Origin: Chrysemys picta bellii
Taxonomy: Eukaryota
Direction of reading: 5' to 3'
Assembly: GCF_011386835.1 (NCBI RefSeq)
Contig: NC_088795.1
Location: 144,646,001 to 144,710,000, forward strand
Length of the DNA: 64,000 nt
Below, one piece after another: positions 42,848 to 61,054 of this stretch. The notes under the pieces were generated by a model. The model made no database searches. It was not told the DNA's origin and saw only the letters and a list, made by a program, of their open reading frames with translations. How positions within the stretch are numbered: position 1 is the first letter of the stretch; every line of letters starts with the position of its first letter. The position numbers and the translations under genes were made by a program.

Positions 42848-46651
<3,804 letters not shown>

Positions 46652-48442: not shown

Positions 48443-51400
48443 CTAATACTCCTCGGCCATGATGAGCACCACCAGGGCAGACCAGCCCGTGAAGGGGTAG
48501 CAGGCCTGGCCCTGGCCCGTGCTGTCGCTGTACTGCTCCCACAGGTAACCGCTCTCCACATACTGGCGGTACAGGTTGGCAATGAGGTTGGCACGCAGCT
48601 CCTGGTAGAGCGCAGCTGCCCGCTGCTGGTAGGGCCCCTCCAGGCTGGCGTAATGGTGCAGCGCCCGCACAGCCAGGTAGTTCATGTTGATCCAGATGGG
48701 CCCCCTCCAGTAGGGGGGTCGTGCTCCGTGTTGTGTTTCATGTAGAGGGGGCTGGTGCGGGGCGAGCGAGCGCAGGCCGTACGGGGTCCAGAGCTTCTGC
48801 TCGCTGCGCATGTCCCCCAGGACGCTGCCCAGGCGGGGTGAGTCGGGCCGCAGCAGCTGCAGCAGGAAGGGGAAGAGGCTGACGTAGCCCAGGGCCCCCA
48901 CGAACTGCAGCTTGGGGGGCTTGCGGACCACCCGCACCAGGCGTGGGGCAGGGAGCTGGTGGCGGGGCTGCCCTGGCCCCACAGCCACCTTCTCGCGCTC
49001 CAGCCCCACGGCCTGGCTGTGGTTGCCGTAGTCGGCGAACATGCCCAGCTGCTCGGCCCAGTGGTGCTGCTCCAGCAGGGCGTTGTCACTCAGCGCCTGC
49101 TGCATGCGCCGGTACTCGGTCGCTGGCTCGCCCAGCCGCTCGGCCACCTCGGCCATGACTCCCGCGGCCAGGGCCATCCAGCAGCGCAGGTCCAGGTGGC
49201 GCTCGTCAGGCGAGGGGTGCGAGGCGCGAGGGTAGTCGTCCAGCCCGGAGGTCAGCGTCTTGGGGTTGAGGAAGAGGTGGGTGTCCTGGTCCCGGCCCCG
49301 CCAGCGGAAGGTGTAGGGCAGCGGCCCCGCCTGCGTGGTGTTGTACCACTCGTACCACGTGCGCAGGCGGGGGAAGAGCTGCCGCAGGTAGGACAGCTCG
49401 GCGGGGCCCTGGCCCGGCTCCCGCAGCAGCTGCTGCAGCGCCAGGAAGAGGGTGGGCGGGTTGGCAGCCTCGTTGTGCTGCAGGATGAATTCGGGGGGCA
49501 CCTTGGCTCGCGCCTCGTCGTCCAGGATCTGCTCCCGCGGGATCCAGCCCCTCCACATTCATCAGGTCCAGCCAGTGGGCGATGACCTCGCGGCTCAGGG
49601 CCGGGTCCCAGCGCGCCAGCAGCAGCTGGTGGAAGCCCTCGTCCCAGAGGAAGCCGCGGGGGAAGAAGGAGCGGGAGGGCACGGCGGTGAACAGGGGGCC
49701 CTCGGGATAGGGCAGGGGGTGCGGGCTGTGCGCAGACTGCACGATGGAGTGCCCGTGGAAGTAGCCCATCCCACCCATCATGTTGCTGAGGGCAGCCTTG
49801 GCAAAGCGCTGCTGCTGGGGCGTGAAGCCCTTGCGGGCCAGGGAGAAGGTCTCCTCGAAGCGCCGTTCGAAGGCGGCCACGTGCCCAGCCAGCTCCTCGC
49901 TCAGCACCGCCCCCACCAGCGAGCCGGGGCGCTCAGCAAAGCTGCCGGACTCAAAGGTCACCTCCACGCGGCAGGGCAGCGTCAGCGTCACCTGGTGCAG
50001 CAGCAGGTGGCTTTGGGGCTCTTGCTCCGGCTCCCCCGGCAGCGCCCGGTACGTGTCCACAGCGAAGTAGCGGCGCTTGGGCCCGCCTGGCGCGGCGTAA
50101 ACAAAGCGGTTGCTCAGGCTGCTCTTCACCACGTCTGTCAGGCGGTGCAGCCCCGGGCTCCTGGCATCCAGGTGGTTATAGCTGCAAGAGAGGAGGGGTC
50201 AGGGCAGGAAGGGAGGCCCGGCTAGGAGCCAGGAACACCCCACAGCCGGAGCTACTGCCCCGCTCCCCACAGCACCCCTCCTGGGAAAGCCAGGAGCTTC
50301 CCGCACAGGCAGGGCTCCCGCCCATACCTGGCATAGCTGAGGGCTTCCCCGGTGTCTGTGGTGGGCTTGTGGAAGGTGATGTTGAAATGGCCGAGTTCCT
50401 CGGATGTCCCAGTCACCGACACCAAGCGCGTGTTCTCCACGTGGGGCTGCAGCGTCCCCTGCCCGTTGGTGGCCACGTAGAAGAGCAGGGAGACGAGGGA
50501 GGTCTGGTTGCCCGGACTCTGCAAAGAGGAAGATGGGACCCTGGTTATCGCTCGCCCCTGTAGCTCTCTGAGCTGGAGACCCCAGGGGCAGCCCTGAGAC
50601 CCTGGCAACCAGGAGACCCTCCCACAGTAGGAAACGCTCCCGGGGGACAGAGACTGGGGCAGGAGAGGAACCGCCACAAAACACAAGGGGCCGGGTGGGC
50701 CAATCTATCCGGAAAACACGTGGGGCTCAAAGCAGGGAGTCCCCACCCGGCCATGGCTCCGCTGGGCGCAGGAAGGGGCAGCACCGAGCACTGTGGGCTC
50801 AGGACTCCCAGCTCCGGGAGGACACGTGGCCTGAGGGTGACAGTAGAGACTTGGAGGGAGGAGGGAGCCCAGGACTCCTGGGTTCCCTTCCCAGATGTCC
50901 CGGACCCCGGGCAGGGCCCTGCATTCCCGCGGCCCCACCTCCGGCCTGGCCGTGACCCGCCAGCTCCAGTCCCCGCCGTGCTCCCCGCCCGGCCGCTTCA
51001 CGAACTCGGTGCGCAGCGTGAGGCCCCGGTCGCGGATCTCCTGCGCCCCGAAGCGCAGCCCGTCGTGCAGCAGCCAGCCGTAGCCGGGCAGCCCGTCGCT
51101 CTGCTCGCACGTGTGGCGCAGCCGGGCCTCCGCCGCCTGCCGCAGCCACATGAAGCCTAGGGGAGAAAGGGGGGAGGGTGAGACCAGACCGGACCGGACC
51201 GGACCCCGCCTCCCCCCGCCGGGCCCCGCCCTACGGTACCTGCCACGGGCGGCCGCGCGCTGCGGGGCCGCATGCCGAAGTAGACGTGCGGGCGGTAGGA
51301 GCCCCAGAAGCGCTCGGGCGCGGCGCGGGGGCCGCTGCTGCCGGCGGGCAGGACGCGCGGCGCCGGGTGCGGGGTGACCACGCGGCGGCCCAGCCGCCAG

Positions 51401-51588
51401 CGCCCGTAGAGCCCGTAGGCCAGGCCGGCGGCGCCCAGCGCCAGGGCGAGCAGCGCCAGCAGCGCCCAGGCCCGGCCCGGCCCCGCGCCCGCCCCGCGCT
51501 CCCGCCGCGCCGCCTGCGGGCCCCGCTCGCCCCGCTCCGCGCCCCGCTGCGCCGCCTCCGCGCCCCGCCGCCTGCGCTCCCGGGCCAT
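48443..51588 (-). CDS. MOGS: Mannosyl-oligosaccharide glucosidase (glucosidase I); exons 51588-51240, 51156-50939, 50518-50328, 50181-48443; ~831 aa after correcting three indels
   Basis: Arg-rich N-terminus, TM segment, [60 protein letters not shown]. Large last exon as in human. Frameshifts in homopolymer runs near 49550, 48761 and 48715. Minus-strand AATAAA at 48149-48154. Confidence 0.95.
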
Positions 51589-51634
51589 GGCCCCGCCGCG
51601 CCGCGCCGAGACAGGGAGCGAGCGGCACCGCCTC

Positions 51635-52290
51635 GTCAGCCCGCCCCGGCCCCGTCAGCACACCGGGCCCCGCCCCCAGTCCGCCTGGCTCCGCCCCCGC
51701 CCCGTCAGCACACCGGGCCCCGCCCCCAGCCCGCCTGGCTCCGCCCCCGCCCCGTCAGCACACCGGGCCCCGCCCCCGCCTGCCCGGCTCCGCCCCCGCC
51801 CCCGCCCCGTCAGCACACCGGGCCCCGCCCCCAGCCCGCCTGGCTCCGCCCCCGCCCCGTCAGCACACCGGGCCCCGCCCCCAGCCCGCCTGGCTCCGCC
51901 CCCGCCCCGTCAGCACACCGGGCCCCGCCCCCGCCTGCCCGGCTCCGCCCCCGCCCCCGCCCCGTCAGCACACCGGGCCCCGCCCCCAGCCCGCCTGGCT
52001 CCGCCCCCGCCCCGTCAGCACACCGGGCCCCGCCCCGTCAGCACACCGGGCCCCGCCCCCAGCCCGCCTGGCCCCGCCCCCGCCCCGTCAGCACACCGGG
52101 CCCCGCCCCCAGCCCGCCCGGCTCCGCCCCCGCCCCGTCAGCACACAGGGCCCCCGCCCCCAGCCCGCGCCCGCCCCGTCAGCACACCGGGCCCCGCCCC
52201 CAGCCCGCCGGGCTCCGCCCCCACCCCTGCCTCGTCAGCACACCGGGCCCCGCCCCCAGCCCGCCTCGTCAGCACACAGGGCCCCGCCCC
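51635..52290. repeat. GC-box-rich minisatellite, ~50-bp unit, ~13 copies, immediately upstream of the MOGS ATG
   Basis: Repeated CGTCAGCACACCGGGCCCCGCCCCCAGCCCGCCTGGCTCCGCCCCCGCCC. Confidence 0.9.
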
Positions 52291-52570
52291 CTCCACGTCA
52301 GCTCGCTAGGCCCCCAGCCCGAGCCCGCCAGCTCGTCCGGCCCCGCCCCCGCGAACCCGCCTCCATCGGCGCTCGCGCGGCCCTTGTACGTCACCATCCT
52401 CAGGAGCGCGCGGCTGGAAGGCCTGACGGCCCCGTCACCGCCTCTCCCGGCATGCCCCACGCGGGGGCCGTAGAGCCACGCCACCTGCCGGTGCGCACTG
52501 GGCCCCATAGCCCAACTACACGTGGCTGGGAGCCTCGCCGCGCTGCATGCTGGGAGTTGTAGTCCAGGGC
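52290..52570 (-). promoter_or_regulatory. MOGS promoter: UPRE-like TGACGTGG and ZNF143/THAP11 motif
   Basis: CCACGTCA at 52293-52300 (rc TGACGTGG); GCATGCTGGGAGTTGTAGT near 52545-52563 (rc ACTACAACTCCCAGCATGC); CACGTG near 52519. Confidence 0.6.
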
Positions 52571-54407
52571 AGCGCCCCAGGGCAGAGGGCAGAGCCAGGC
52601 CCAGCCGGTTCTGAGCCGCCCCAGGAGGGGGTGGGGGCCAGGTGCAGCTCGGTGCTGAGCCCTACCCCCGGCCAGGGGCTAACCCGGGCACGGCCGAGGG
52701 GTGATGGGCCAGCCCAGGGCAGGCAGGTCCCAGGCTCTGCGGGCAGCAGCTCTCAAGGGGTCACACCTCACAGCCCCAAGCCCTGCAGCTGGGAACACGC
52801 TGGGTGAGCCACGGTCCTTGGGGCTTCCCACGAGCTGCTGGCCAGCGAGCTCCCCCCCCCCATACACACAGTGGAGGACAAACACAGGCTAGACCAGCCA
52901 TTCCTTTGAACACATCTTTATTGTGTTTATGCATAAGCGCTGCCTTCGCCCTGCTCCTCAAGCCAGGGAGGGCCATCCACTGCTGCTGCTCCCAGCTGCT
53001 GACTCCCTGCTCCCAAGCCCAACAGTGGGGCCTACCAGGGGGTGATAGACTCTCCTCAGGGTGCTGGAAGGCAGAGCTGGAGTAGCCCCCCCAGGTCCCA
53101 CCTTGCTCAAGCGCTGGGGTTTAAGGCCCCTGCCCTGGGAGATGAGTCCCAGCCCATCACCCCCCTGAGATACCCACAGCCACCCTAGGCCTACAGGCCC
53201 CCCGGCTCCACACCTTTCAAATACCTGCCCTTTGTCAACTGGGCCCCCTTAAGCCCCCACTCCAGCTGTCACACCCAGTGCTCCTGCATGCAGCCCCTAG
53301 CAGTGGTTGGTGTTACCTCCTCCCAGTGCTGCAGCCCAGAGGAGCTCCACTATGATGAAACGCTGTAGGGTAGTAAAGTAAGCACAAGGCAGTGGACTGG
53401 GGGTAATGCTCAGCCGATCACCTTAGGGGCAGAGCTGAGGCTAGTCTCTGGGGCAGTCCTTATGTGGGTCCCTGGGGGGGAGCAGGATCTTTGCCTAGAA
53501 GAGGAGCAGAGCTGAGATGTGGGGAGGTAGGTGTGGCCCCCTTACCTGTGTCACTGCCCATGAGGCAAGCTGATCGGTGTGACCCAGAATCCTTTGCTCT
53601 GGAGGTTGTTCCTGGCCCTTGGCATAAGATACAAGGAAGCAGCTTGTCCTGTGTGGCCGGGTGCCCAGCCCAGGGAGTGGCCTGGGCATGGCTCTTGCAA
53701 GCCCCCAGCTCCACTCCCTGGGGCAGAATAAGGACACACTGCCTTCCCCTAAAACAGGCTGGTCTTACCCAGCCCATTCTGCAGGCCACGCCCTGGTGTG
53801 GGAATGGGGGGCACCAAGGAGCACGCTGCAGATGGAGTTACAGCCAGGCCTGCGCCACCAGGCCTCCCCCCAGCTGGACTGCCACATGGGGTGACCTCAG
53901 TTGCTCCATTGTGGGGAAGGAAGGAATCCCAAAGCCCCCAAGCAGAGCTCCCCAACCCAGGGTAGAGTGAGAACCAGGCCCTTTCCTGAACTAGCCAGCA
54001 TAGGAGGCTGGGGGGAGAGGGGAGGGAGGAAATGCCCCCTTGCTAACCCCACTGCATGGAGCCAAGCTTGGGGGGGCACAGACACAGCCCCACTAGGCGA
54101 GGGAGGGGCATCTCCCAGCTGGGGCTGCAGGGAGGGGACAAGAGTCCTGCAGCTGCACCCAGCCCCCCACCCTTCCACCTCCAGGGCAGCCCCAGCTGGG
54201 AGATCAGCCCACCAGCCCCCTCCCTGCTCCTGGACCCCAGCTCCCCCCCAAGATCCATCACAGCCTCTGCACTGCCCCTCTGGGAGCTGGGGCTGGGTGG
54301 TTCCCTGGCGCCGTTCCCAGCTGGAGACAGACAAGAAGGAGCTCCAGGGCTGGGGGACATCAATCACCTCCAGGGGACTGTCGGGCTGGGGGGGACGAGA
54401 CGGCCAG

Positions 54408-57400
54408 TTACTGCTTGATCTGCCCCCCATCACCCTCGCTCACAAATCGCTTCCGGCCCCTTGGAGAGAGGAAAGACACGAATGTCAGTGAGCCAGGCCC
54501 CAGCCAACCCTGGGCTCTCCCCACACACAGCTCCGCCGGTGCCCCTCACTCCCGACCCACAGCTCTGCCGTGCCCCTCCATCCCAACCTGCAGCCCCTGC
54601 TACCTCAGCCCGGGGCTCCCCACACAGCTCTGCCAGTGCCCCTCACTCCCAACCCACAGCCTCTGCTAGCCTAGCTCTGCCGATGTCCCTCAATCCTGAC
54701 CCACAGCCCCTGCTACCCCAGCACTGGGTTTCCCCCCACCTCCAACCCACAAGCTCCTTCTATCCCAGCCCCAGGCTCCTCTGCAGTTCTCCTGGTGCGC
54801 CTCAAACCTGACCCGTAGTCCCCCATGCTGCAGCTACCTGGCTGGGCAGGTGTCTCTCAGCTGCTTGGTGATGACTCCCTCCTCGAAGCAGAGATCCACC
54901 AGCCGCTCCAGGATACGGTGAGCAAGGGGCACATCCAGGCTGATGTCTCCGAGCTCGTCATAGACTCGCTGAAAGCCCTGGGGGATCAGGAGAACTGGGA
55001 TCAGAGCCAGGAATGCTGAGGCAGAGCAGGGAGGGGCCGTGATGCCCCAGGGAGACCTTGCGCCCTGGGCTGGGAATGGCAGCCCGTGCTGCAGTCAATC
55101 CTAGAGGCTGAATCTGCCCCCACAAGGGCCTCCTCACCTCTGCTGCAGCTGGCCAGTCTGCCGAGACTCCATGGCTGGCTCCCCTGCACTATTCATGGCA
55201 CCAACCCAGCCCCTTGCTCCCCGGGCTCCTGTCCCAGCTCCAGCACTCACCCGGTTCATCTGGTCCAGGGTCACCAGGCCGGTCTCCCACAGCACCTTGA
55301 GCAGTTTTACCATCATGACGACGGGCGTCTCGCCTGTGGACTCCAGCACCATCACTACAGCCTGCGAGGATGGAGGAGGGGGCGTCAGCATGGGGTGGGC
55401 AGCACCAGCCACTGCTGGCATCCCGGACACCCCCCAGGATCCAGGTAGCAAGCATAGCTCCCACGGCCGGGCCGCAGCAGCCACTGGGGGTGCCGCGGGT
55501 ACTGCCCCCGGCCAGCGCTGGCCATCACAGCACAGCCCCAAACGGACGCCCCAGGCCAGGCCTGCGCCCTACCTCATAGACCAGCTCATGATGGAAGTGA
55601 GGGACCTCCAGTTCCCGCAGGCAGTGCTCTGCCTCCGACACCTCCCCGGACAGCAGGTACTCGCGCAGCAGCAGGTTCATCTGTGGGGAAAGGTACTGAG
55701 GGCTCAGCATGGGGACGGGCAGGCGCCCGCCCAGGCCCCGTGCAGCCCCGGGGCCAAGCCGGCCAGCGAGGGGCGCAAGGCGCTCACCTCTTTGATGAGA
55801 TGCTTCACGGGCCTCTGGCCGCCCCCCACTCCCCACACGTTGTCCAACTGGTTCACGTCCCGCTTGATCCGGAGCAGCACTGCGGCGCGGTCCAAGGCAG
55901 CCCTGCAAGGAGGAGACAGTGAGGAGCAGGGGGCTCTCCCTGGAGATGCTGCCAGCTGGGGGCAGAGCAGACCAGGCTGGTGCCAGGGCAGGGCGGGGGG
56001 AGGAGACTCTTACCGGGCGTGCTCACAGTCCACGCGCCCCTTGTAGCGGTCCAGGAAGTCCAGGGGCAACGCATGGTCAGCCACGGCCCGGGCAATGAAT
56101 TGGCCCAGCATCTGCAGAGACACGAGCGTGTGGTCAGGGCGCAGACGCTGCCCAGGGGCCTGGCACAGCACCTCCTCTGCCTGGCAGGGCCAGGTCCTAG
56201 AGCCCCCACCCAACTCCCGATCACCATGGCATTCCCAGCCCCGCCCCCACCCTCCCAAGGGCATTCCCAGCTCCTCCCTTCCCATGCACCACCCCCCCAG
56301 CATTCCCAGTCCCACCCAGGGCATTCCCCCCTCCCAGTTCTCCCCCCCCCATGCCATTCCTGCCCCTGGCCCCACCATGTCTCCCCAGCCCCTCCCAGGG
56401 GTATTCCCAGCCCCACCTGCGGAGCCTCAGGAGTGTCCAGGATGAGGTCAGGCAGGTCCTTGAGCATCTTGTCGAAGGCCCTGGCGATGTCCTCCGAGGT
56501 CATGACCTTGCCCACGAGGTCAGAGAGCAGGCGGGAGGTCAGCTCCCGGTGGCTGGCCTTGCCCTCCAGTGCCAGCGCCACAGCCAGTGAGGGGACGGCG
56601 TGCTTCCTGCTGCCCAGGTTCAGCTCCTTCAGCAGCTCCTGCGCCCAGCACAGCGCGTCAGCCCAGCCCCGCTCCGGCCTCCTTCCTCCACGGCGCCCAG
56701 CCCCACTCCATCCTCCTCCTTCCTCAGCAGTTCCCAGTGCCCTCCCCTGGCACCGCAGGGGCCCCCGGGGCCTAGCCAGATGGATGTGGCCCCTGAATCC
56801 CTCCCAGCCCAGAAGCCCGCTGGGGGGAGATGGGGTGGCAGAGGGACTCCCCAGACTCACCATCACCTCGAGGGTGTCCCCGTGTTCAAAGTACTCCAGC
56901 ACCATGGGGTGCACGTTCTTCTCCAGCTCCCCCTCCTCCAGCTCCGGCGTCACCGTGGCATAGACCGTGTCGCCCTGTAGAGAGGGGCAGAGGGGCTCAC
57001 GGCCAGCGGTACCCCCACTGCGACAGGCCCCACCCACACAAGCACCAGTCCGTGGGGCTCCGGGGAGGGGGCTGGCATGGCTGAGCGGGGGCAGGCAGAC
57101 AGGCCGGGGGCAGCAGTGGGTGGGTGCTGGGGTCCGAGTTCAGTGACGCTTGGCTCCGGGGGGGGAGGAAGGGGCCCGGGAACGTACCTGAGATGATTCG
57201 TCGTAGTTGGGGTCCCGAGCGTCGGGCTCCTGGTACCCGTACACCAGGCCAGGTGCACCCCACACACCCTTGCCCCCAGCACCACCTGCAGGAGACACAG
57301 TGGTTCAGCCACCCCCATGGGCCACAGCATCCCAGCCGGGCACCAACCCAGCTCTGCCTGCTACAGAAAAGGGACCGGGGGCCTCTGGGCAAGGGTAGCG

Positions 57401-58125
57401 CACTGCTCAGAGCCCCCAGCCCAGGGCAAAGCTGGGCACCAGCGCAGCACTGGCTCACGGCAGGCTCCCAGCCCGGGCATGACTGTGTCACAAGTGTAGT
57501 GAGTTCAGTGGGGCCCAGCAAACCCACAGCACGTGGCAGGAGCGGCTCCCACCCAGCACAGGAAGAGCAGGGGACTGCGTGGGGATTGAGGGAGGATCCC
57601 TGTGTCTTTGGGGCAGCAGGAGGGAGCAGGGGCTGCACTGTGTGGGGTGTGGGGACTGGGAGCTGCACTGTGGGGCAGCAGTGAGCCAGGAGGGACTGCA
57701 GGGGTGTGCGCTATGTGACAGCCAGGTGGGCCACAGGCTGCACTGTGGGGCAGGGGTGTGCCCCAAGGCAGCAGGAGGGGCAGGGGGATGCAGGGAGGGC
57801 ATCAGGGTGATGGGAGCCTGCACTGTGAGGCAGGGGTGTGCTGCATCTCACCTTTCTTGGGGAGCCCACGGCCCTTGCCCATACGCGACTTCCTGTCATT
57901 GGTCTTGCCCTTGGGGCTGCTGGGGTCGGGGCTGGGCTCCCCCCCCTCGGGTGCCGGCTCCCGGGTGGAGTCCCGGGACGAGGTGCGCCGCAGGCGCCGC
58001 TTGGCCTTGGCTTTGAGCCGAGCTTCGTGCAGGGCCTTCTCCTGTGGGGTCCAGGAGCGGGACTCGTCGCCATCCATCAGCTCCTCTTCCAGAGCCTCGT
58101 CCTCTGAGCCTGCCTGGCACGTGGC
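54408..58125 (-). CDS. PDCD4-like protein (two MA3 domains); exons 58125-57852, 57285-57188, 56974-56861, 56638-56417, 56111-56014, 55902-55788, 55680-55573, 55361-55251, 54977-54838, 54459-54408
   Basis: [19 protein letters not shown]; [19 protein letters not shown]; EYFEHGD; [10 protein letters not shown]; [19 protein letters not shown]; [13 protein letters not shown]. All junctions GT-AG, frame open (1332 nt). Clearly diverged from PDCD4 itself, so called a paralog. Minus-strand AATAAA at 52917-52922. Confidence 0.93.
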
Positions 58126-58689
58126 CTGCAAGGCACGGTGGTCTCAGAGACGCCCCGCTGCCCCCAAGAGCCCCGGGAGAGGCAGAGGAGCCAGGGGCTG
58201 CCCCACGGAGCGCTTCCTTTCCCTTCCTATTCACCCCCCCTCCAGTCCCGGCCTCGCCCAGCAAGGGGCGCGCTAGGGAGCAGCTGGCTGAATTCACACG
58301 GCTCCAGACAACCTCCCGCCCCAGGGGAAGTGAAAGAGCCAAGGCCCAACCCGCAAATGTCATGCCAAGCAGGGGAACAGCCTGTGCCCTTGCTGCAGGC
58401 TGGGGGCAGTGGAGGGGCTGCCCATTCCCCCGCCCCCCCCGAGGGATGCAGACCGCTCCAGGGCAGGTCTCTGCCCCCAACCTCACTATGGGGTGTAGCA
58501 CCCTCCTGCTGCACCCCCAGGCTGGGGACAGAGTCGCTCAGACGGGCCAGGCTCCTGGCATCCCAGGGCATGGAGACCGGGCGTGGGGGCCTGGGAACGG
58601 CCGAGTTCCCCGCTGGGAGGGAATATGGAGAATTGGGCTAGAGCCAGGCAGGACCGGGCAACCCCCGGCCGCCAGCGCCTCCGACTCCC

Positions 58690-59240
58690 GCCCCGCGTCC
58701 CCCCGGGCCCCCCACTCCCGCCAGTGCCCCCCACTCCCGCCCCGCAGCCCTCGGGGCCCCCCACTCCCGCCCTGCAGGCCCCCCGACCCCCACCAGCGCC
58801 CCCCACTCCCGCCCCGCAGCCCCCGACCCCCACTCCCGCCCCGCAGCCCCTCGGACCCCCCGCCAGCGCCCCCCACTCCCGCCCCGCGTCCCCCCGGACC
58901 CCCCACTCCCGCCAGCGCCCCCCACTCCCGCCCCGCAACCCCCGACCCCCACCAGCGCCCCCCACTCCCGCCCTGCAGCCCCCCGGGCCCCACCACTCCC
59001 GCCAGCGCCCCCCACTCCCGCCCTGCAGCCCCCCGACCCCCACCAGCGCCCCCCACTCCCGCCCCACAGCCCCCGACCCCCACCAGCGCCCCCCACTCCC
59101 GCCCCGCAGCCCCCGACCCCCACCAGCGCCCCCCACTCCCGCCCCGCAGCCCCCCGACCCCCACCAGCGCCCCCCACTCCCGCCCCGCAGCCCCCGGAGC
59201 CCCCCACTCCCGCCCCGCAGCCCCCGACCCCCACTCCCGC
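58690..59240. repeat. C-rich minisatellite in PDCD4-like intron 1
   Basis: Repeated CCCCACTCCCGCCCCGCAGCCCCCGACCCCCACCAGCGCC variants. Confidence 0.88.
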
Positions 59241-59408
59241 CCCGCGGCCCCCGGGCGGACAGAAGCGGAGGGGGACGGAGGGCCCCCCCCGCTGGCCAGG
59301 CAGCTCGTGCCCCGTGGCGCTCGGCCCCGGCCCCGCCCCCAGCGCACATGGGGACCGGGCAGAACGCGCCCGGGGGGGGGGGGATTGGGGGCGGGGCAGG
59401 CCCGGTAC

Positions 59409-59460
59409 TTGCCAGGGCGGCGGCGGCCGGGCCGCGGGCGGGGCTGACCGATCCCGACAT
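59409..59460 (-). CDS. Candidate first coding exon of the PDCD4-like gene (MSGSVSPARGPAAAALA)
   Basis: gccATGt in a CpG island just downstream of an ETS/CRE motif; donor AA|GTACCG in phase 1. The best acceptor of the next exon is phase 0, so the junction is unresolved. Confidence 0.4.
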
Positions 59461-59543
59461 GGCCGCTGGCGGCAGCTCCGAGCCGGGCACGATCCCGACC
59501 CTGAAGCTCCGCTGAGCCTCGCTGCTTCGCGCGCCCGCCCCTT

Positions 59544-59558
59544 GCGGAAGTGACGCAC
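59544..59558. promoter_or_regulatory. Composite ETS + half-CRE motif (GCGGAAGTGACGCAC) in the PDCD4-like CpG-island promoter
   Basis: Overlapping CGGAAGT and TGACG, about 85 bp upstream of ATG 59460. Confidence 0.6.
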
Positions 59559-59739
59559 AGGGGGGGCGGGACTCCAGCCAACTCCCCTCAACCTCGCAGC
59601 CGCAGGGCGCGAGCGGCCCCGCCCCCATGCCCCGCCCACGCTAGCAGGGGCCGCGGGGGGCGGGGTCGCTGCACAGACCAATGGCCGCTCTGCGCCGCCC
59701 CCTACCTGCCCCCGGAGCAACGGTTCCACAGCCGCCAGA

Positions 59740-60975
59740 CTGAGCCATGGCTCTGGGAAGGGGGGGAAGCAGGGAGCGGACTGACCCATGGCTCTGGGGA
59801 GGGGGGGGAAGCAGGGAGCGGACTGACCCATGGCTCTGGGGAGGGGAGGGAGCGGACTGACCCATGGCTCTGGGAAGGGGGGGGAAGCAGGGAGCGGACT
59901 GACCCATGGCTCTGGGAAGGGGGCGGAAGCAGGGAGCGGACTGACCCATGGCTCTGGGGAGGGGGGGGAAGCAGGGAGCGGACTGACCCATGGCTCTGGG
60001 GAGGGGGGGGAAGCAGGGAGCGGACTGACCCATGGCTCTGGGGAGGGGAGGGAGCGGACTGACCCATGGCTCTGGGAAGGGGGGGGAAGCAGGGAGCGGA
60101 CTGACCCATGGCTCTGGGAAGGGGGCGGAAGCAGGGAGCGGACTGACCCATGGCTCTGGGGAGGGGGCGGAAGCAGGGTGCGGACTGACCCATGGCTCTG
60201 GGGAGGGGAGGGAGCGGACTGACCCATGGCTCTGGGAAGGGGGGGGAAGCAGGGAGCGGACTGACCCATGGCTCTGGGGAGGGGGCGGAAGCAGGGAGCG
60301 GACTGACCCATGGCTCTGGGAAGGGGGGGGAAGCAGGGAGCGGACTGACCCATGGCTCTGGGGAGGGGGGGAAGCAGGGAGCGGACTGACCCATGGCGCT
60401 GGGGAGGGGAGGGGAGGGAGCGGACTGACCCATGGCTCTGGGAAGGGGGGGGAAGCAGGGAGCGGACTGACCCATGGCTCTGGGGAGGGGGGGGAAGCAG
60501 GGAGCAGACTGACCCATGGCTCTGGGGAGGGGAGGGGAGGGGAGGGAGCGGACTGACCCATGGCTCTGGGAAGGGGGGGAAGCAGGGAGCGGACTGACCC
60601 ATGGCTCTGGGGAGGGGGGGGAAAGCAGGGAGCGGACTGACCCATGGCTCTGGGGAGGGGGGGAAAGCAGGGAGCGGACTGACCCATGGCTCTGGGGAGG
60701 GGGGGGAAGCAGGGAGCGGACTGACCCATGGCTCTGGGAAGGGGTGGGAAGCAGGGAGCGGACTGACCCATGGCTCTGGGAAGGGGGGGGAAGCAGGGAG
60801 CGGACTGACCCATGGCTCTGGGAAGGGGGGGGAGCGGACTGACCCATGGCTCTGGGAAGGGGGGGGAAGCAGGGAGCGGACTGACCCATGGCTCTGGGAA
60901 GGGGGGGGCGGACTGACTCATGGCTCTGGGAAGGGGGGGGAAGCAGGGAGCGGACTGACTCATAGCTCTGGGGAG
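59740..60975. repeat. Minisatellite, ~42-bp unit (with ~35-bp variants), ~30 copies
   Basis: Repeated GGGAGCGGACTGACCCATGGCTCTGGG(A/G)AGGGGGGGAAGCA. Confidence 0.95.
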
Positions 60976-61054
60976 GGGGGGTAAGGAGTGGACTCAGTCT
61001 TGGTTCTTCCCGGGACCCCACCAGCCAGGGCAATGGTGGGGGGCAGAGAGGGGG

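What the first reader, a model, noticed from the sequence alone, without database searches (positions are those of the whole stretch)
54408..59460. Intact PDCD4 paralog beside MOGS that keeps the kinase sites but lacks the betaTrCP degron
Seen: a complete, frame-intact two-MA3 gene with PDCD4-like splice phases. It keeps RRLRRTSS (equivalent to the S67 S6K1/Akt site), RGRKRFVS (S457 site) and the acidic eIF4A-contact motifs ([17 protein letters not shown]). The human degron DSGRGDS is replaced by DSTREPA. A by-eye scan of the ~1.5-kb 3'UTR (52900-54400) found no miR-21 seed match. Known: human PDCD4 lies on 10q with WBP1L and RTKN2, is degraded via S6K1-betaTrCP and is repressed by miR-21; I recall no PDCD4 gene at human 2p13. 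Inference: a whole-genome-duplication ohnolog lost in mammals, possibly an eIF4A inhibitor resistant to mTOR-driven degradation, which would be relevant to translational shutdown in anoxia- or hibernation-tolerant turtles.
Basis: partly seen in the sequence, partly recalled or inferred. Interest (0 to 1): 0.75.

Follow-up and report, generated by a model that had tools for sequence, protein, structure and literature searches.

The report
Turtle copy of fish pdcd4a gene
This painted-turtle gene is a working second copy of the translation brake PDCD4: an ancient duplicate kept by sharks, fish, amphibians, reptiles and birds but not found in mammals, already in the databases as 'PDCD4-like' or pdcd4a, and lacking the two best-known off-switches of PDCD4.

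Summary
On the minus strand, 54408-59460, lies an intact 11-exon, 459-aa gene with two MA3 domains. Its translation is 100% identical to RefSeq 'programmed cell death protein 4-like' of Chrysemys picta bellii. All ten introns are spliced out in contigs of four public runs. dN/dS is 0.09-0.15.

A tree splits vertebrate PDCD4 proteins 100/100 into two clades, each with sharks, ray-finned fish, coelacanth, amphibians and sauropsids. This gene falls in the pdcd4a / 'PDCD4-like' clade; mammals appear only in the PDCD4/pdcd4b clade. Its position next to MOGS and WBP1 is shared with Mauremys, a bird and pufferfish. The canonical turtle PDCD4 sits beside BBIP1. So 'old ohnolog not found in mammals' is supported.

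The S6K/Akt-type sites, the eIF4A-contact acidic residues and the [19 protein letters not shown] stretch are kept. DSGRGDS is replaced by DSTREPA. No retrieved pdcd4a-clade protein has the degron glycine, so this is not turtle-specific. The 3'UTR has no miR-21 seed, whereas canonical turtle PDCD4 mRNA has an 8-mer.

Resistance to degradation and any link to anoxia are untested. The gene is already annotated, and pdcd4a is named in zebrafish. Only the regulatory divergence seems unreported.

The parts
59413..59460 (-). Coding part of exon 1 (MSGSVSPARGPAAAAL). The 5'UTR continues upstream to at least 59590.
   Evidence: The joint 58123/59411 (free to shift up to 3 places) is seen in contigs of X2, X7 and X10; the placement that gives an AG acceptor and a GC donor ends exon 1 at 59413 and starts exon 2 at 58125. 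An X7 contig covers 59411-59590. The N-terminus matches the RefSeq model.
58126..59412 (-). Intron 1, GC-AG type. It holds a 40-bp G+C-rich minisatellite at 58669-59252.
57852..58125 (-). Exon 2, the N-terminal regulatory region. It holds RRLRRTSS (57976-57999; Ser65 aligns with human Ser67) and DSTREPA in place of DSGRGDS (57952-57972). It also holds the start of the conserved [22 protein letters not shown] segment.
57188..57285 (-). Exon 3
   Evidence: GT-AG; joint seen in all four runs
56861..56974 (-). Exon 4 (start of the first MA3 domain)
56417..56638 (-). Exon 5, core of the first MA3 domain. LPDLILDTP at 56429-56455 aligns with human Glu249 (here Asp) and Asp253.
   Evidence: Pfam MA3 E=3.7e-10; PDB PDCD4 chains E=7e-32
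56014..56111 (-). Exon 6
55788..55902 (-). Exon 7 (linker between the MA3 domains)
55573..55680 (-). Exon 8 (start of the second MA3 domain)
   Evidence: Pfam MA3 E=3.5e-8
55251..55361 (-). Exon 9
54838..54977 (-). Exon 10, end of the second MA3 domain. GDISLDVP at 54927-54950 aligns with human Asp414 and Asp418.
   Evidence: Pfam MA3
54408..54459 (-). Coding part of exon 11: (R)[16 protein letters not shown] and the stop codon. Ser450 aligns with human Ser457. The ESY tail of PDCD4 is absent.
52900..54407 (-). 3'UTR of about 1.5 kb, 62% G+C, AATAAA at 52922. It has no miR-21 seed match of any length from 6 to 8.
   Evidence: The laid stretch began at 53600; contigs cover 53600-54458, and the unlaid lengths of X2 and X10 contigs imply they run on below 53600, to about 52916 (an inference from contig length). 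Seed scan.
48443..51661 (-). Neighbour MOGS (glycosyl hydrolase family 63), tail-to-head directly downstream of the gene.
   Evidence: Pfam Glyco_hydro_63 E=3.7e-149 and Glyco_hydro_63N E=5e-18
45911..46651 (+). Probable WBP1 exon
   Evidence: Pfam WBP-1 27.9 bits, just under the 28.1 cut-off. Its position and strand agree with the WBP-1 gene beside MOGS in Mauremys and Porphyrio.

Best explanation
This is the painted-turtle ortholog of the vertebrate gene called pdcd4a in fish and 'PDCD4-like' in amphibians, reptiles and birds. It is the sister paralog of PDCD4 (pdcd4b in fish).

Shown:
- The two copies separated before cartilaginous and bony vertebrates diverged. That timing fits the early vertebrate genome duplications.
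- The gene has stayed in the CCDC142-MOGS interval since then.
- It was not found in mammals.
- It is transcribed, correctly spliced and under strong purifying selection.

Inferred from conserved residues:
- The protein most likely works like PDCD4. Its two MA3 domains would clamp eIF4A through the conserved acidic loops.
- Its N-terminal basic [19 protein letters not shown] segment would engage RNA or the 40S subunit, so cap-dependent initiation is slowed.

Inferred, weaker:
- Its control differs from that of PDCD4. It keeps the RxRxxS kinase sites aligned with Ser67 and Ser457. It has no DSGxxxS betaTrCP degron anywhere, and in turtles not even the second serine. Its mRNA has no miR-21 site.
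- Growth-factor/mTOR signalling and miR-21 therefore probably do not remove it in the way they remove PDCD4.
For: Gene and expression:
- Intact 459-aa model, identical to RefSeq XP_005278481.1.
- All 10 junctions appear in spliced contigs of 4 runs from 3 organisms and 4 studies, at 100-580x against 3-10x for intron pieces.
- All 8 listed coding differences are synonymous.
- Nei-Gojobori dN/dS is 0.09 against Mauremys reevesii and 0.15 against Porphyrio.

Phylogeny:
- The a/b split has 100/100 support, and the window gene lies inside the turtle a-clade.
- Mauremys, Varanus, Rhinatrema, Ambystoma, Spea, Latimeria, Lepisosteus, Amia and Anguilla each carry both copies.
- No mammal is among the best 120 a-clade hits.

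Synteny:
- Mauremys: CCDC142-PDCD4L-MOGS-WBP1.
- Porphyrio: TTC31-like gene-CCDC142-PDCD4L-MOGS-WBP1-INO80B-RTKN (gene names are my reading of the Pfam domains).
- Takifugu: WBP1-pdcd4a-MOGS.
- Canonical PDCD4 of Mauremys mutica lies beside BBIP1.

Gene structure: 9 of 10 intron positions and phases are shared with PDCD4.

Function-bearing residues are kept:
- Asp/Asp at the positions of Glu249/Asp253, and Asp/Asp at those of Asp414/Asp418. Their mutation was used to probe eIF4A binding in PMC3089569.
- The RLRRTS and RKRFVS kinase-site motifs.

Regulatory divergence:
- Every b-clade protein with a readable motif has DSG[RKQ]GDS. No a-clade protein has the glycine.
- No DSG-type motif occurs elsewhere in the turtle protein.
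- Both degron serines are needed for betaTrCP recognition (PMC6539695).
- Canonical turtle PDCD4 mRNA has ATAAGCTA at 3'UTR nt 235. The a-copies of two turtles, a bird, pufferfish and gar have no 7- or 8-mer.
Against: - No biochemical datum exists for any pdcd4a-clade protein in the papers searched. eIF4A binding and protein half-life are both unmeasured.
- Most a-clade proteins keep a conserved DS[T/A/N]RES(L)SE block. Its serine spacing (DSxxxS) equals that of the classical DSGxxS degron. It could be a weak or alternative degron, or a target of another ligase.
- The retained Ser67-like site argues that kinase control persists in some form.
- Absence of an A+T-rich seed in a 62% G+C UTR is close to the chance expectation (0.18 six-mers expected).
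- Zebrafish pdcd4a rose in miR-21 morphants (PMC3709480), so miR-21 may still act on this clade in some species, directly or not.
- Absence from mammals was tested only on annotated proteins. G+C-rich regions are often missing from assemblies.
- The tree has no outgroup.
Confidence: 0.85

Rival explanations
1. It is simply the turtle's PDCD4 ortholog, the only copy in the genome, relocated next to MOGS.
For: Some databases label members of this clade plainly 'programmed cell death protein 4', for example in Chelonia, Caretta, Gallus and Microcaecilia.
Against: Turtles have a separate 468-aa PDCD4. It groups with mammalian PDCD4, lies beside BBIP1 and carries DSGRGDS and the miR-21 8-mer. The window protein is only 57-58% identical to it, against 77-82% to gar and coelacanth pdcd4a.
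Confidence: 0.01
2. It is a recent reptile- or turtle-specific duplicate, a retrocopy or a decaying pseudogene that happens to be open.
For: It lies in a very G+C-rich, repeat-rich region, with minisatellites in intron 1 and upstream.
Against: It has ten introns, nine of them at PDCD4 positions. Orthologs with the same MOGS neighbour reach to pufferfish, and clade members reach to sharks. dN/dS is 0.09-0.15. Spliced transcripts are present.
Confidence: 0.01
3. It is a genuine old paralog, but it is regulated much like PDCD4. Phosphorylation at the Ser67-like site would still trigger ubiquitin-dependent turnover. This could run through the conserved DS[T/A/N]RES(L)SE block, through acidic phosphomimics, or through another ligase such as SKP2. 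On this reading the paralogs differ mainly in where and when they are expressed.
For: The RxRxxS site and the serine- and acid-rich block after it are strongly conserved in most of the clade. The DSxxxS spacing equals that of classical DSGxxS degrons (established knowledge of betaTrCP substrates). SKP2 is reported to ubiquitinate PDCD4 (PMC6375223; title and abstract only). Zebrafish pdcd4a was induced in miR-21 morphants (PMC3709480).
Against: The degron glycine is never present. Turtles, galliform birds, snakes and the kagu have also lost the second serine ([27 protein letters not shown]). Both phosphoserines are required for betaTrCP binding (PMC6539695). No other DSG-like motif exists in the protein.
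Confidence: 0.3
4. It has a turtle-specific adaptive role: the paralog was retained or modified to enforce translational arrest in anoxia or hibernation.
For: The window is from the painted turtle, an anoxia-tolerant species. Turtles lost the second degron serine. In crucian carp, PDCD4A and PDCD4B phosphopeptides change in anoxia (PMC11170284).
Against: The gene and its glycine-less motif are shared by sharks, fish, amphibians, lizards and birds that do not tolerate anoxia. The same serine loss occurs in grouse, chicken and snakes. No paper links this gene to turtle anoxia.
Confidence: 0.07

Closest known systems
PDCD4 (human, mouse and chicken; pdcd4b in fish)
   Same: It has two MA3 domains and the same exon-intron plan in 9 of 10 introns. 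The acidic eIF4A-contact residues are conserved. The [19 protein letters not shown] segment is nearly invariant. The RxRxxS sites at the Ser67 and Ser457 positions are kept. Identity is 57-58% over the whole length.
   Different: It belongs to the other clade of the tree and sits at a different locus (CCDC142-MOGS rather than beside BBIP1). DSGRGDS is replaced by DSTREPA. The N-terminal linker is shorter. The C-terminal ESY tail is missing. The 3'UTR has no miR-21 8-mer. No ortholog was found in mammals.
Zebrafish and other fish pdcd4a; 'programmed cell death protein 4-like' of RefSeq in amphibians, squamates, crocodilians and birds
   Same: It is in the same orthogroup by tree and by the MOGS/WBP1 neighbourhood. 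Identity is 74-89%. It shares the glycine-less motif and the ...GGxIKQ end.
   Different: Turtles, like galliform birds, snakes and the kagu, have also lost the second serine of the block (RESLSE became REPAPE). Their UTR is much richer in G+C.
Other vertebrate ohnologs kept outside mammals
   Same: An old duplicate retained from sharks to birds and missing from mammalian gene sets. It lies in a region whose other genes have known paralogs near PDCD4's chromosome in human: WBP1/WBP1L, RTKN/RTKN2, LBX2/LBX1, TLX2/TLX1. That list is from my own knowledge and was not tested here.
   Different: Here the retained copy differs from its well-studied sister exactly in the two regulatory elements for which the sister is best known.

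Membership tests
PDCD4 family (two-MA3 translation inhibitors) | Two MA3 domains in tandem | tested here: met
   Pfam MA3 hits in exons 5, 8 and 10. Exon 5 aligns end to end with PDCD4 crystal chains at E=7e-32. The precomputed Pfam domain for the orthologs is PF02847.
PDCD4 family (two-MA3 translation inhibitors) | Acidic eIF4A-contact residues (human Glu249/Asp253 in MA3m, Asp414/Asp418 in MA3c) | tested here: met
   LPDLILDTP and GDISLDVP align with LPELALDTP and IPDINLDVP. Glu249 is Asp here; the other three residues are identical. The residues were taken from PMC3089569. Binding itself is not testable here.
PDCD4 family (two-MA3 translation inhibitors) | Conserved basic N-terminal segment [19 protein letters not shown] | tested here: met
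   It is essentially invariant in both clades, with one substitution each in two b-clade fish. Its role in RNA or 40S binding is from my own knowledge of PDCD4 structures and was not tested here.
PDCD4 family (two-MA3 translation inhibitors) | RxRxxS kinase sites at the Ser67 and Ser457 positions | tested here: met
   RLRRTS (Ser65) and RKRFVS (Ser450). Consensus from PMC6539695.
PDCD4 proper (ortholog of human PDCD4 / pdcd4b) | Groups with mammalian PDCD4 in a tree | tested here: not met
   It falls in the other clade; the split has 100/100 support.
PDCD4 proper (ortholog of human PDCD4 / pdcd4b) | betaTrCP degron DSGxxxS after the S6K1 site | tested here: not met
   The sequence here is DSTREPA. 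No DSG-type motif occurs anywhere in the protein.
PDCD4 proper (ortholog of human PDCD4 / pdcd4b) | Conserved miR-21 site about 230 nt into the 3'UTR | tested here: not met
   None here. It is present as the 8-mer ATAAGCTA at nt 235 of the canonical turtle PDCD4 mRNA.
PDCD4 proper (ortholog of human PDCD4 / pdcd4b) | Locus beside BBIP1 | tested here: not met
   The window gene lies beside MOGS. Canonical PDCD4 of Mauremys mutica lies beside BBIP1.
pdcd4a / PDCD4-like orthogroup | Tree placement with fish pdcd4a and tetrapod PDCD4-like | tested here: met
   It is 100% identical to the RefSeq PDCD4-like protein of Chrysemys.
pdcd4a / PDCD4-like orthogroup | Conserved neighbourhood with MOGS and WBP1 | tested here: met
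   Window, Mauremys, Porphyrio, Takifugu. The gar locus had no called neighbour within 10 kb.
Ohnolog from the early vertebrate genome duplications | The duplication predates the split of cartilaginous and bony vertebrates and postdates invertebrate chordates | tested here: inconclusive
   The first half is met: sharks or chimaera are in both clades. The second half needs lamprey and invertebrate outgroups, which were not obtained.
Ohnolog from the early vertebrate genome duplications | Lies in paralogous chromosome blocks | not tested
   The pairs WBP1/WBP1L, RTKN/RTKN2, LBX2/LBX1 and TLX2/TLX1 are recalled from knowledge of the human map. Only the turtle-side neighbours were verified.

The most novel reading that the evidence does not exclude
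Across non-mammalian jawed vertebrates, pdcd4a/PDCD4-like is a constitutively stable brake on translation. It binds eIF4A and the 40S subunit as PDCD4 does, but it escapes both S6K1-betaTrCP degradation and miR-21 repression. These animals would then keep a growth-factor-insensitive layer of initiation control that mammals gave up when they lost the gene. The painted turtle could draw on that layer during metabolic arrest.
Probability: 0.3. Interest if true: 0.55.

Novelty: already known. Interest (0 to 1): 0.3.

Why it matters
PDCD4 is studied almost only in mammals, where there is one gene. Its removal by S6K1-betaTrCP and by miR-21 is central to its role as a tumour suppressor.

Chicken, zebrafish, Xenopus relatives and turtles carry a second, highly conserved copy that lacks both elements. 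Two practical consequences follow.

First, experiments on Pdcd4 in chicken or fish cells may be buffered by the paralog. The chicken has it (XP_040527849.1). Such buffering is an inference.

Second, the paralog is a natural 'degron-less, miR-21-site-less' PDCD4. It could be used to separate the protein's inhibitory activity from its turnover.

None of this changes what kind of molecule it is. The gene itself is already in RefSeq, Ensembl and ZFIN.

Tried and rejected
- Splicing the ATG exon with a GT donor: no GT donor gave the right frame. The contigs showed a GC-AG intron instead.
- An internal start at the Met of ELMDGDES was considered. It was dropped once the 5' exon was seen joined in three runs and matched RefSeq.
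- The gar pdcd4a locus gave no synteny information: the gene spans 36 kb and no neighbour lies within 10 kb.
- One look-up for canonical PDCD4 failed for lack of a free slot and was repeated.
- Literature searches for a described PDCD4 ohnolog or 'lost in mammals' found nothing. 'PDCD4-like' hits were plant or invertebrate papers. A search for PDCD4, turtle and anoxia found nothing pertinent.
- The large representative-protein search was not run. So no lamprey or invertebrate outgroup was obtained.
- No structure was predicted. At 57% identity to solved PDCD4 structures it would add nothing.
- INO80B and RTKN were not verified inside this window, only in the bird locus.
- The N runs at 43117-43519 were left untouched.
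A capuchin PDCD4 protein (P0129) served for residue numbering.

Full report
**What is there**

On the minus strand between 54408 and 59460 I rebuilt an 11-exon coding sequence of 1380 nt (459 codons plus stop) from the raw sequence. Nine introns are GT-AG. The first is GC-AG, with the strong donor ctg|GCAAGT. Pfam finds MA3 in exons of both halves. Exon 5 aligns end to end with the crystal chains of human and mouse PDCD4 at E about 7e-32. The translation is identical, residue for residue, to RefSeq XP_005278481.1, 'programmed cell death protein 4-like' of Chrysemys picta bellii. The window is therefore painted turtle, and the gene model is already public.

**Is it a live gene**

Contigs of four public runs (three organisms, four studies) were laid on 53600-59590.
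- They contain the mRNA with all ten introns removed exactly at the predicted borders, at depths of 100-580 against 3-10 for stray intron pieces.
- Three runs join the ATG exon (ending at 59413) to exon 2 (starting at 58125).
- A fourth run carries a contig that runs unspliced from exon 2 into intron 1, as far as 58668.
- The tool labels these runs 'RNA?'. The spliced form itself is what shows they are cDNA.

All eight coding differences listed between the window and those contigs are synonymous. I took the orthologous exons from the Mauremys reevesii and Porphyrio loci. Nei-Gojobori dN/dS is 0.09 against Mauremys and 0.15 against Porphyrio, with GC3 of 0.83-0.90.

**Which gene it is**

A word-index search with the first MA3 region returned 'PDCD4-like' proteins of turtles, birds, squamates, an alligator and amphibians. 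It also returned pdcd4a of ray-finned fish, coelacanth and sharks. A search with coelacanth pdcd4b returned PDCD4 of mammals, birds, turtles, squamates and amphibians, and pdcd4b of fish, sharks and chimaera.

A maximum-likelihood tree of 51 proteins splits the two sets with 100/100 support (quick tree, careful tree). Each side repeats the species tree from cartilaginous fish upward. Nine sampled genera carry one copy on each side. The window protein sits with the other turtles in the pdcd4a side. It is 57-58% identical to turtle and primate PDCD4, and in local BLASTP alignments about 82-83% identical to gar and coelacanth pdcd4a.

Over long distances the pdcd4a side is if anything the slower one. 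Turtle-gar identity is 77.7% for the a-copies against 71.2% for PDCD4.

**Neighbourhood**

In the window, MOGS lies directly downstream on the same strand (Glyco_hydro_63, E=3.7e-149). A probable WBP1 exon follows on the other strand. Related loci show these orders:
- Mauremys reevesii: CCDC142-PDCD4L-MOGS-WBP1.
- The bird Porphyrio: TTC31-like gene-CCDC142-PDCD4L-MOGS-WBP1-INO80B-RTKN. The gene names here are my reading of the Pfam domains listed.
- Takifugu: WBP1-pdcd4a-MOGS.

Canonical PDCD4 of Mauremys mutica lies next to BBIP1. Orthology by tree and by position agree.

Nine of the ten introns lie at the same aligned codon and phase as in canonical turtle PDCD4. Seven consecutive exons have identical sizes.

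**Mammals**

A full-length search with the Mauremys protein listed 120 hits, all from the pdcd4a side. None was mammalian. A mammalian ortholog at roughly 80% identity would have ranked high. This is absence from annotated proteins, not from genomes, and G+C-rich regions such as this one are often badly assembled.

**Kept and changed residues**

Kept:
- RLRRTS, where Ser65 aligns with human Ser67 of RLRKNS.
- RKRFVS, where Ser450 aligns with Ser457.
- The near-invariant [21 protein letters not shown] segment.
- The acidic pairs at the positions of Glu249/Asp253 and Asp414/Asp418. Their mutation was used to probe eIF4A binding in PMC3089569.

Changed:
- DSGRGDS is DSTREPA.
- The linker after it is four or five residues shorter.
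- The protein ends ...GGQIKQ, without the ESY tail.

I tabulated the motif in all 283 proteins retrieved by then. Every PDCD4-side protein with a readable motif has DSG[RKQ]GDS. No pdcd4a-side protein has the glycine. The common form there is DS[T/A/N]RES(L)SE.

Turtles ([18 protein letters not shown]), galliform birds including chicken (DSAREPPAE), snakes and the kagu have also lost the second serine. No other DSG-type motif exists in the turtle protein. According to the review PMC6539695, S6K1 phosphorylates Ser67. That promotes phosphorylation of Ser71 and Ser76, and both phosphoserines are needed for betaTrCP recognition.

**miR-21**

The 1.5-kb 3'UTR has no match to the seed, not even TAAGCT. 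By base composition only 0.18 six-mers are expected, so this alone says little. As a positive control I used a 4.1-kb transcript contig that encodes the canonical turtle PDCD4. It has the 8-mer ATAAGCTA at nt 235 of its 3'UTR. This is about where, from memory, the human site lies; the human position was not checked here. The regions downstream of the a-copies of Mauremys, Porphyrio, Takifugu (40% G+C) and gar (42% G+C) have no 7- or 8-mer. Gar has one 6-mer. The difference therefore looks like a property of the two paralogs. Against this, zebrafish pdcd4a and pdcd4b were both reported as induced in miR-21 morphants (PMC3709480).

**Reading**

Identity is settled. This is the pdcd4a / PDCD4-like ortholog, an old sister of PDCD4 that arose before jawed vertebrates diversified. 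It has been kept at the MOGS-CCDC142 interval and is missing from mammalian gene sets.

Function as a PDCD4-type inhibitor of eIF4A-dependent initiation is inferred from conserved residues and is likely.

Escape from betaTrCP and miR-21 is a reasonable inference from sequence. It is strongest for turtles, galliform birds and snakes, but it is untested. The conserved phospho-acceptor block in most of the clade leaves room for another kind of control.

A special tie to turtle anoxia has no support. The gene and its motif are shared by many animals that do not tolerate anoxia. The only related datum is that PDCD4A and PDCD4B phosphopeptides change in anoxic crucian carp (PMC11170284).

**Novelty**

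The gene is annotated in RefSeq for this very species and for dozens of others, and pdcd4a is a named zebrafish gene. In the searchable literature I found no paper that does any of the following:
- equates tetrapod PDCD4-like with pdcd4a;
- notes that mammals lack it;
- notes that it has no degron.

That is a modest evolutionary and regulatory observation, not a new kind of system.

**Limits**

- There is no outgroup, so the duplication is dated only as older than the shark/bony-vertebrate split. Whether the degron was lost or gained is open.
- The paralogous human blocks are recalled, not tested.
- Expression level and tissue could not be read from contigs.

Noticed in passing
window 59738-60985: A 42-bp minisatellite of about 31 copies lies just upstream of the gene's first exon. 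It is open in several frames and gives long spurious ORFs (PLPRAMGQSAPCFP...). A RefSeq isoform of 471 aa (P0305) starts inside this area with MGQSAPCFPPFPEPWLSLAAVEPLLRGQ joined to exon 2. That suggests an alternative first exon, or a model artefact.
   Followed up: partly
window 58669-59252: A 40-bp G+C-rich minisatellite of about 11-12 copies sits inside the GC-AG first intron. One run (X1) has a contig that runs unspliced from exon 2 up to 58668, with a 22-nt insertion at 58166. This could be intron retention or an internal start.
   Followed up: no
window 51661-52922; L003 13628-13970: PDCD4-like and MOGS are packed tail to head. There is roughly 1 kb between the poly(A) signal and the start of MOGS here. 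In the bird Porphyrio only 342 bp separate the stop codon from the next gene. This probably explains fused database models, such as 'Mannosyl-oligosaccharide glucosidase' P0081, CCDC142-PDCD4 fusions of 1471-1612 aa in Phasianus, and 'LBX2 isoform X2' in Alligator.
   Followed up: partly
L002 and L003 (Mauremys, Porphyrio loci): No MRPL53-like gene is called between MOGS and CCDC142 in the turtle and bird loci. From memory, human has MRPL53 at that position. I did not look for it.
   Followed up: no
proteins of the pdcd4a clade: The serine- and leucine-rich block RESLSE has turned proline-rich independently in turtles, galliform birds, snakes and the kagu. These lineages have very G+C-rich copies (GC3 0.83-0.90). 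This may reflect GC-biased substitution rather than selection.
   Followed up: no
window 43117-43519: Two N runs (assembly gap or masked).
   Followed up: no
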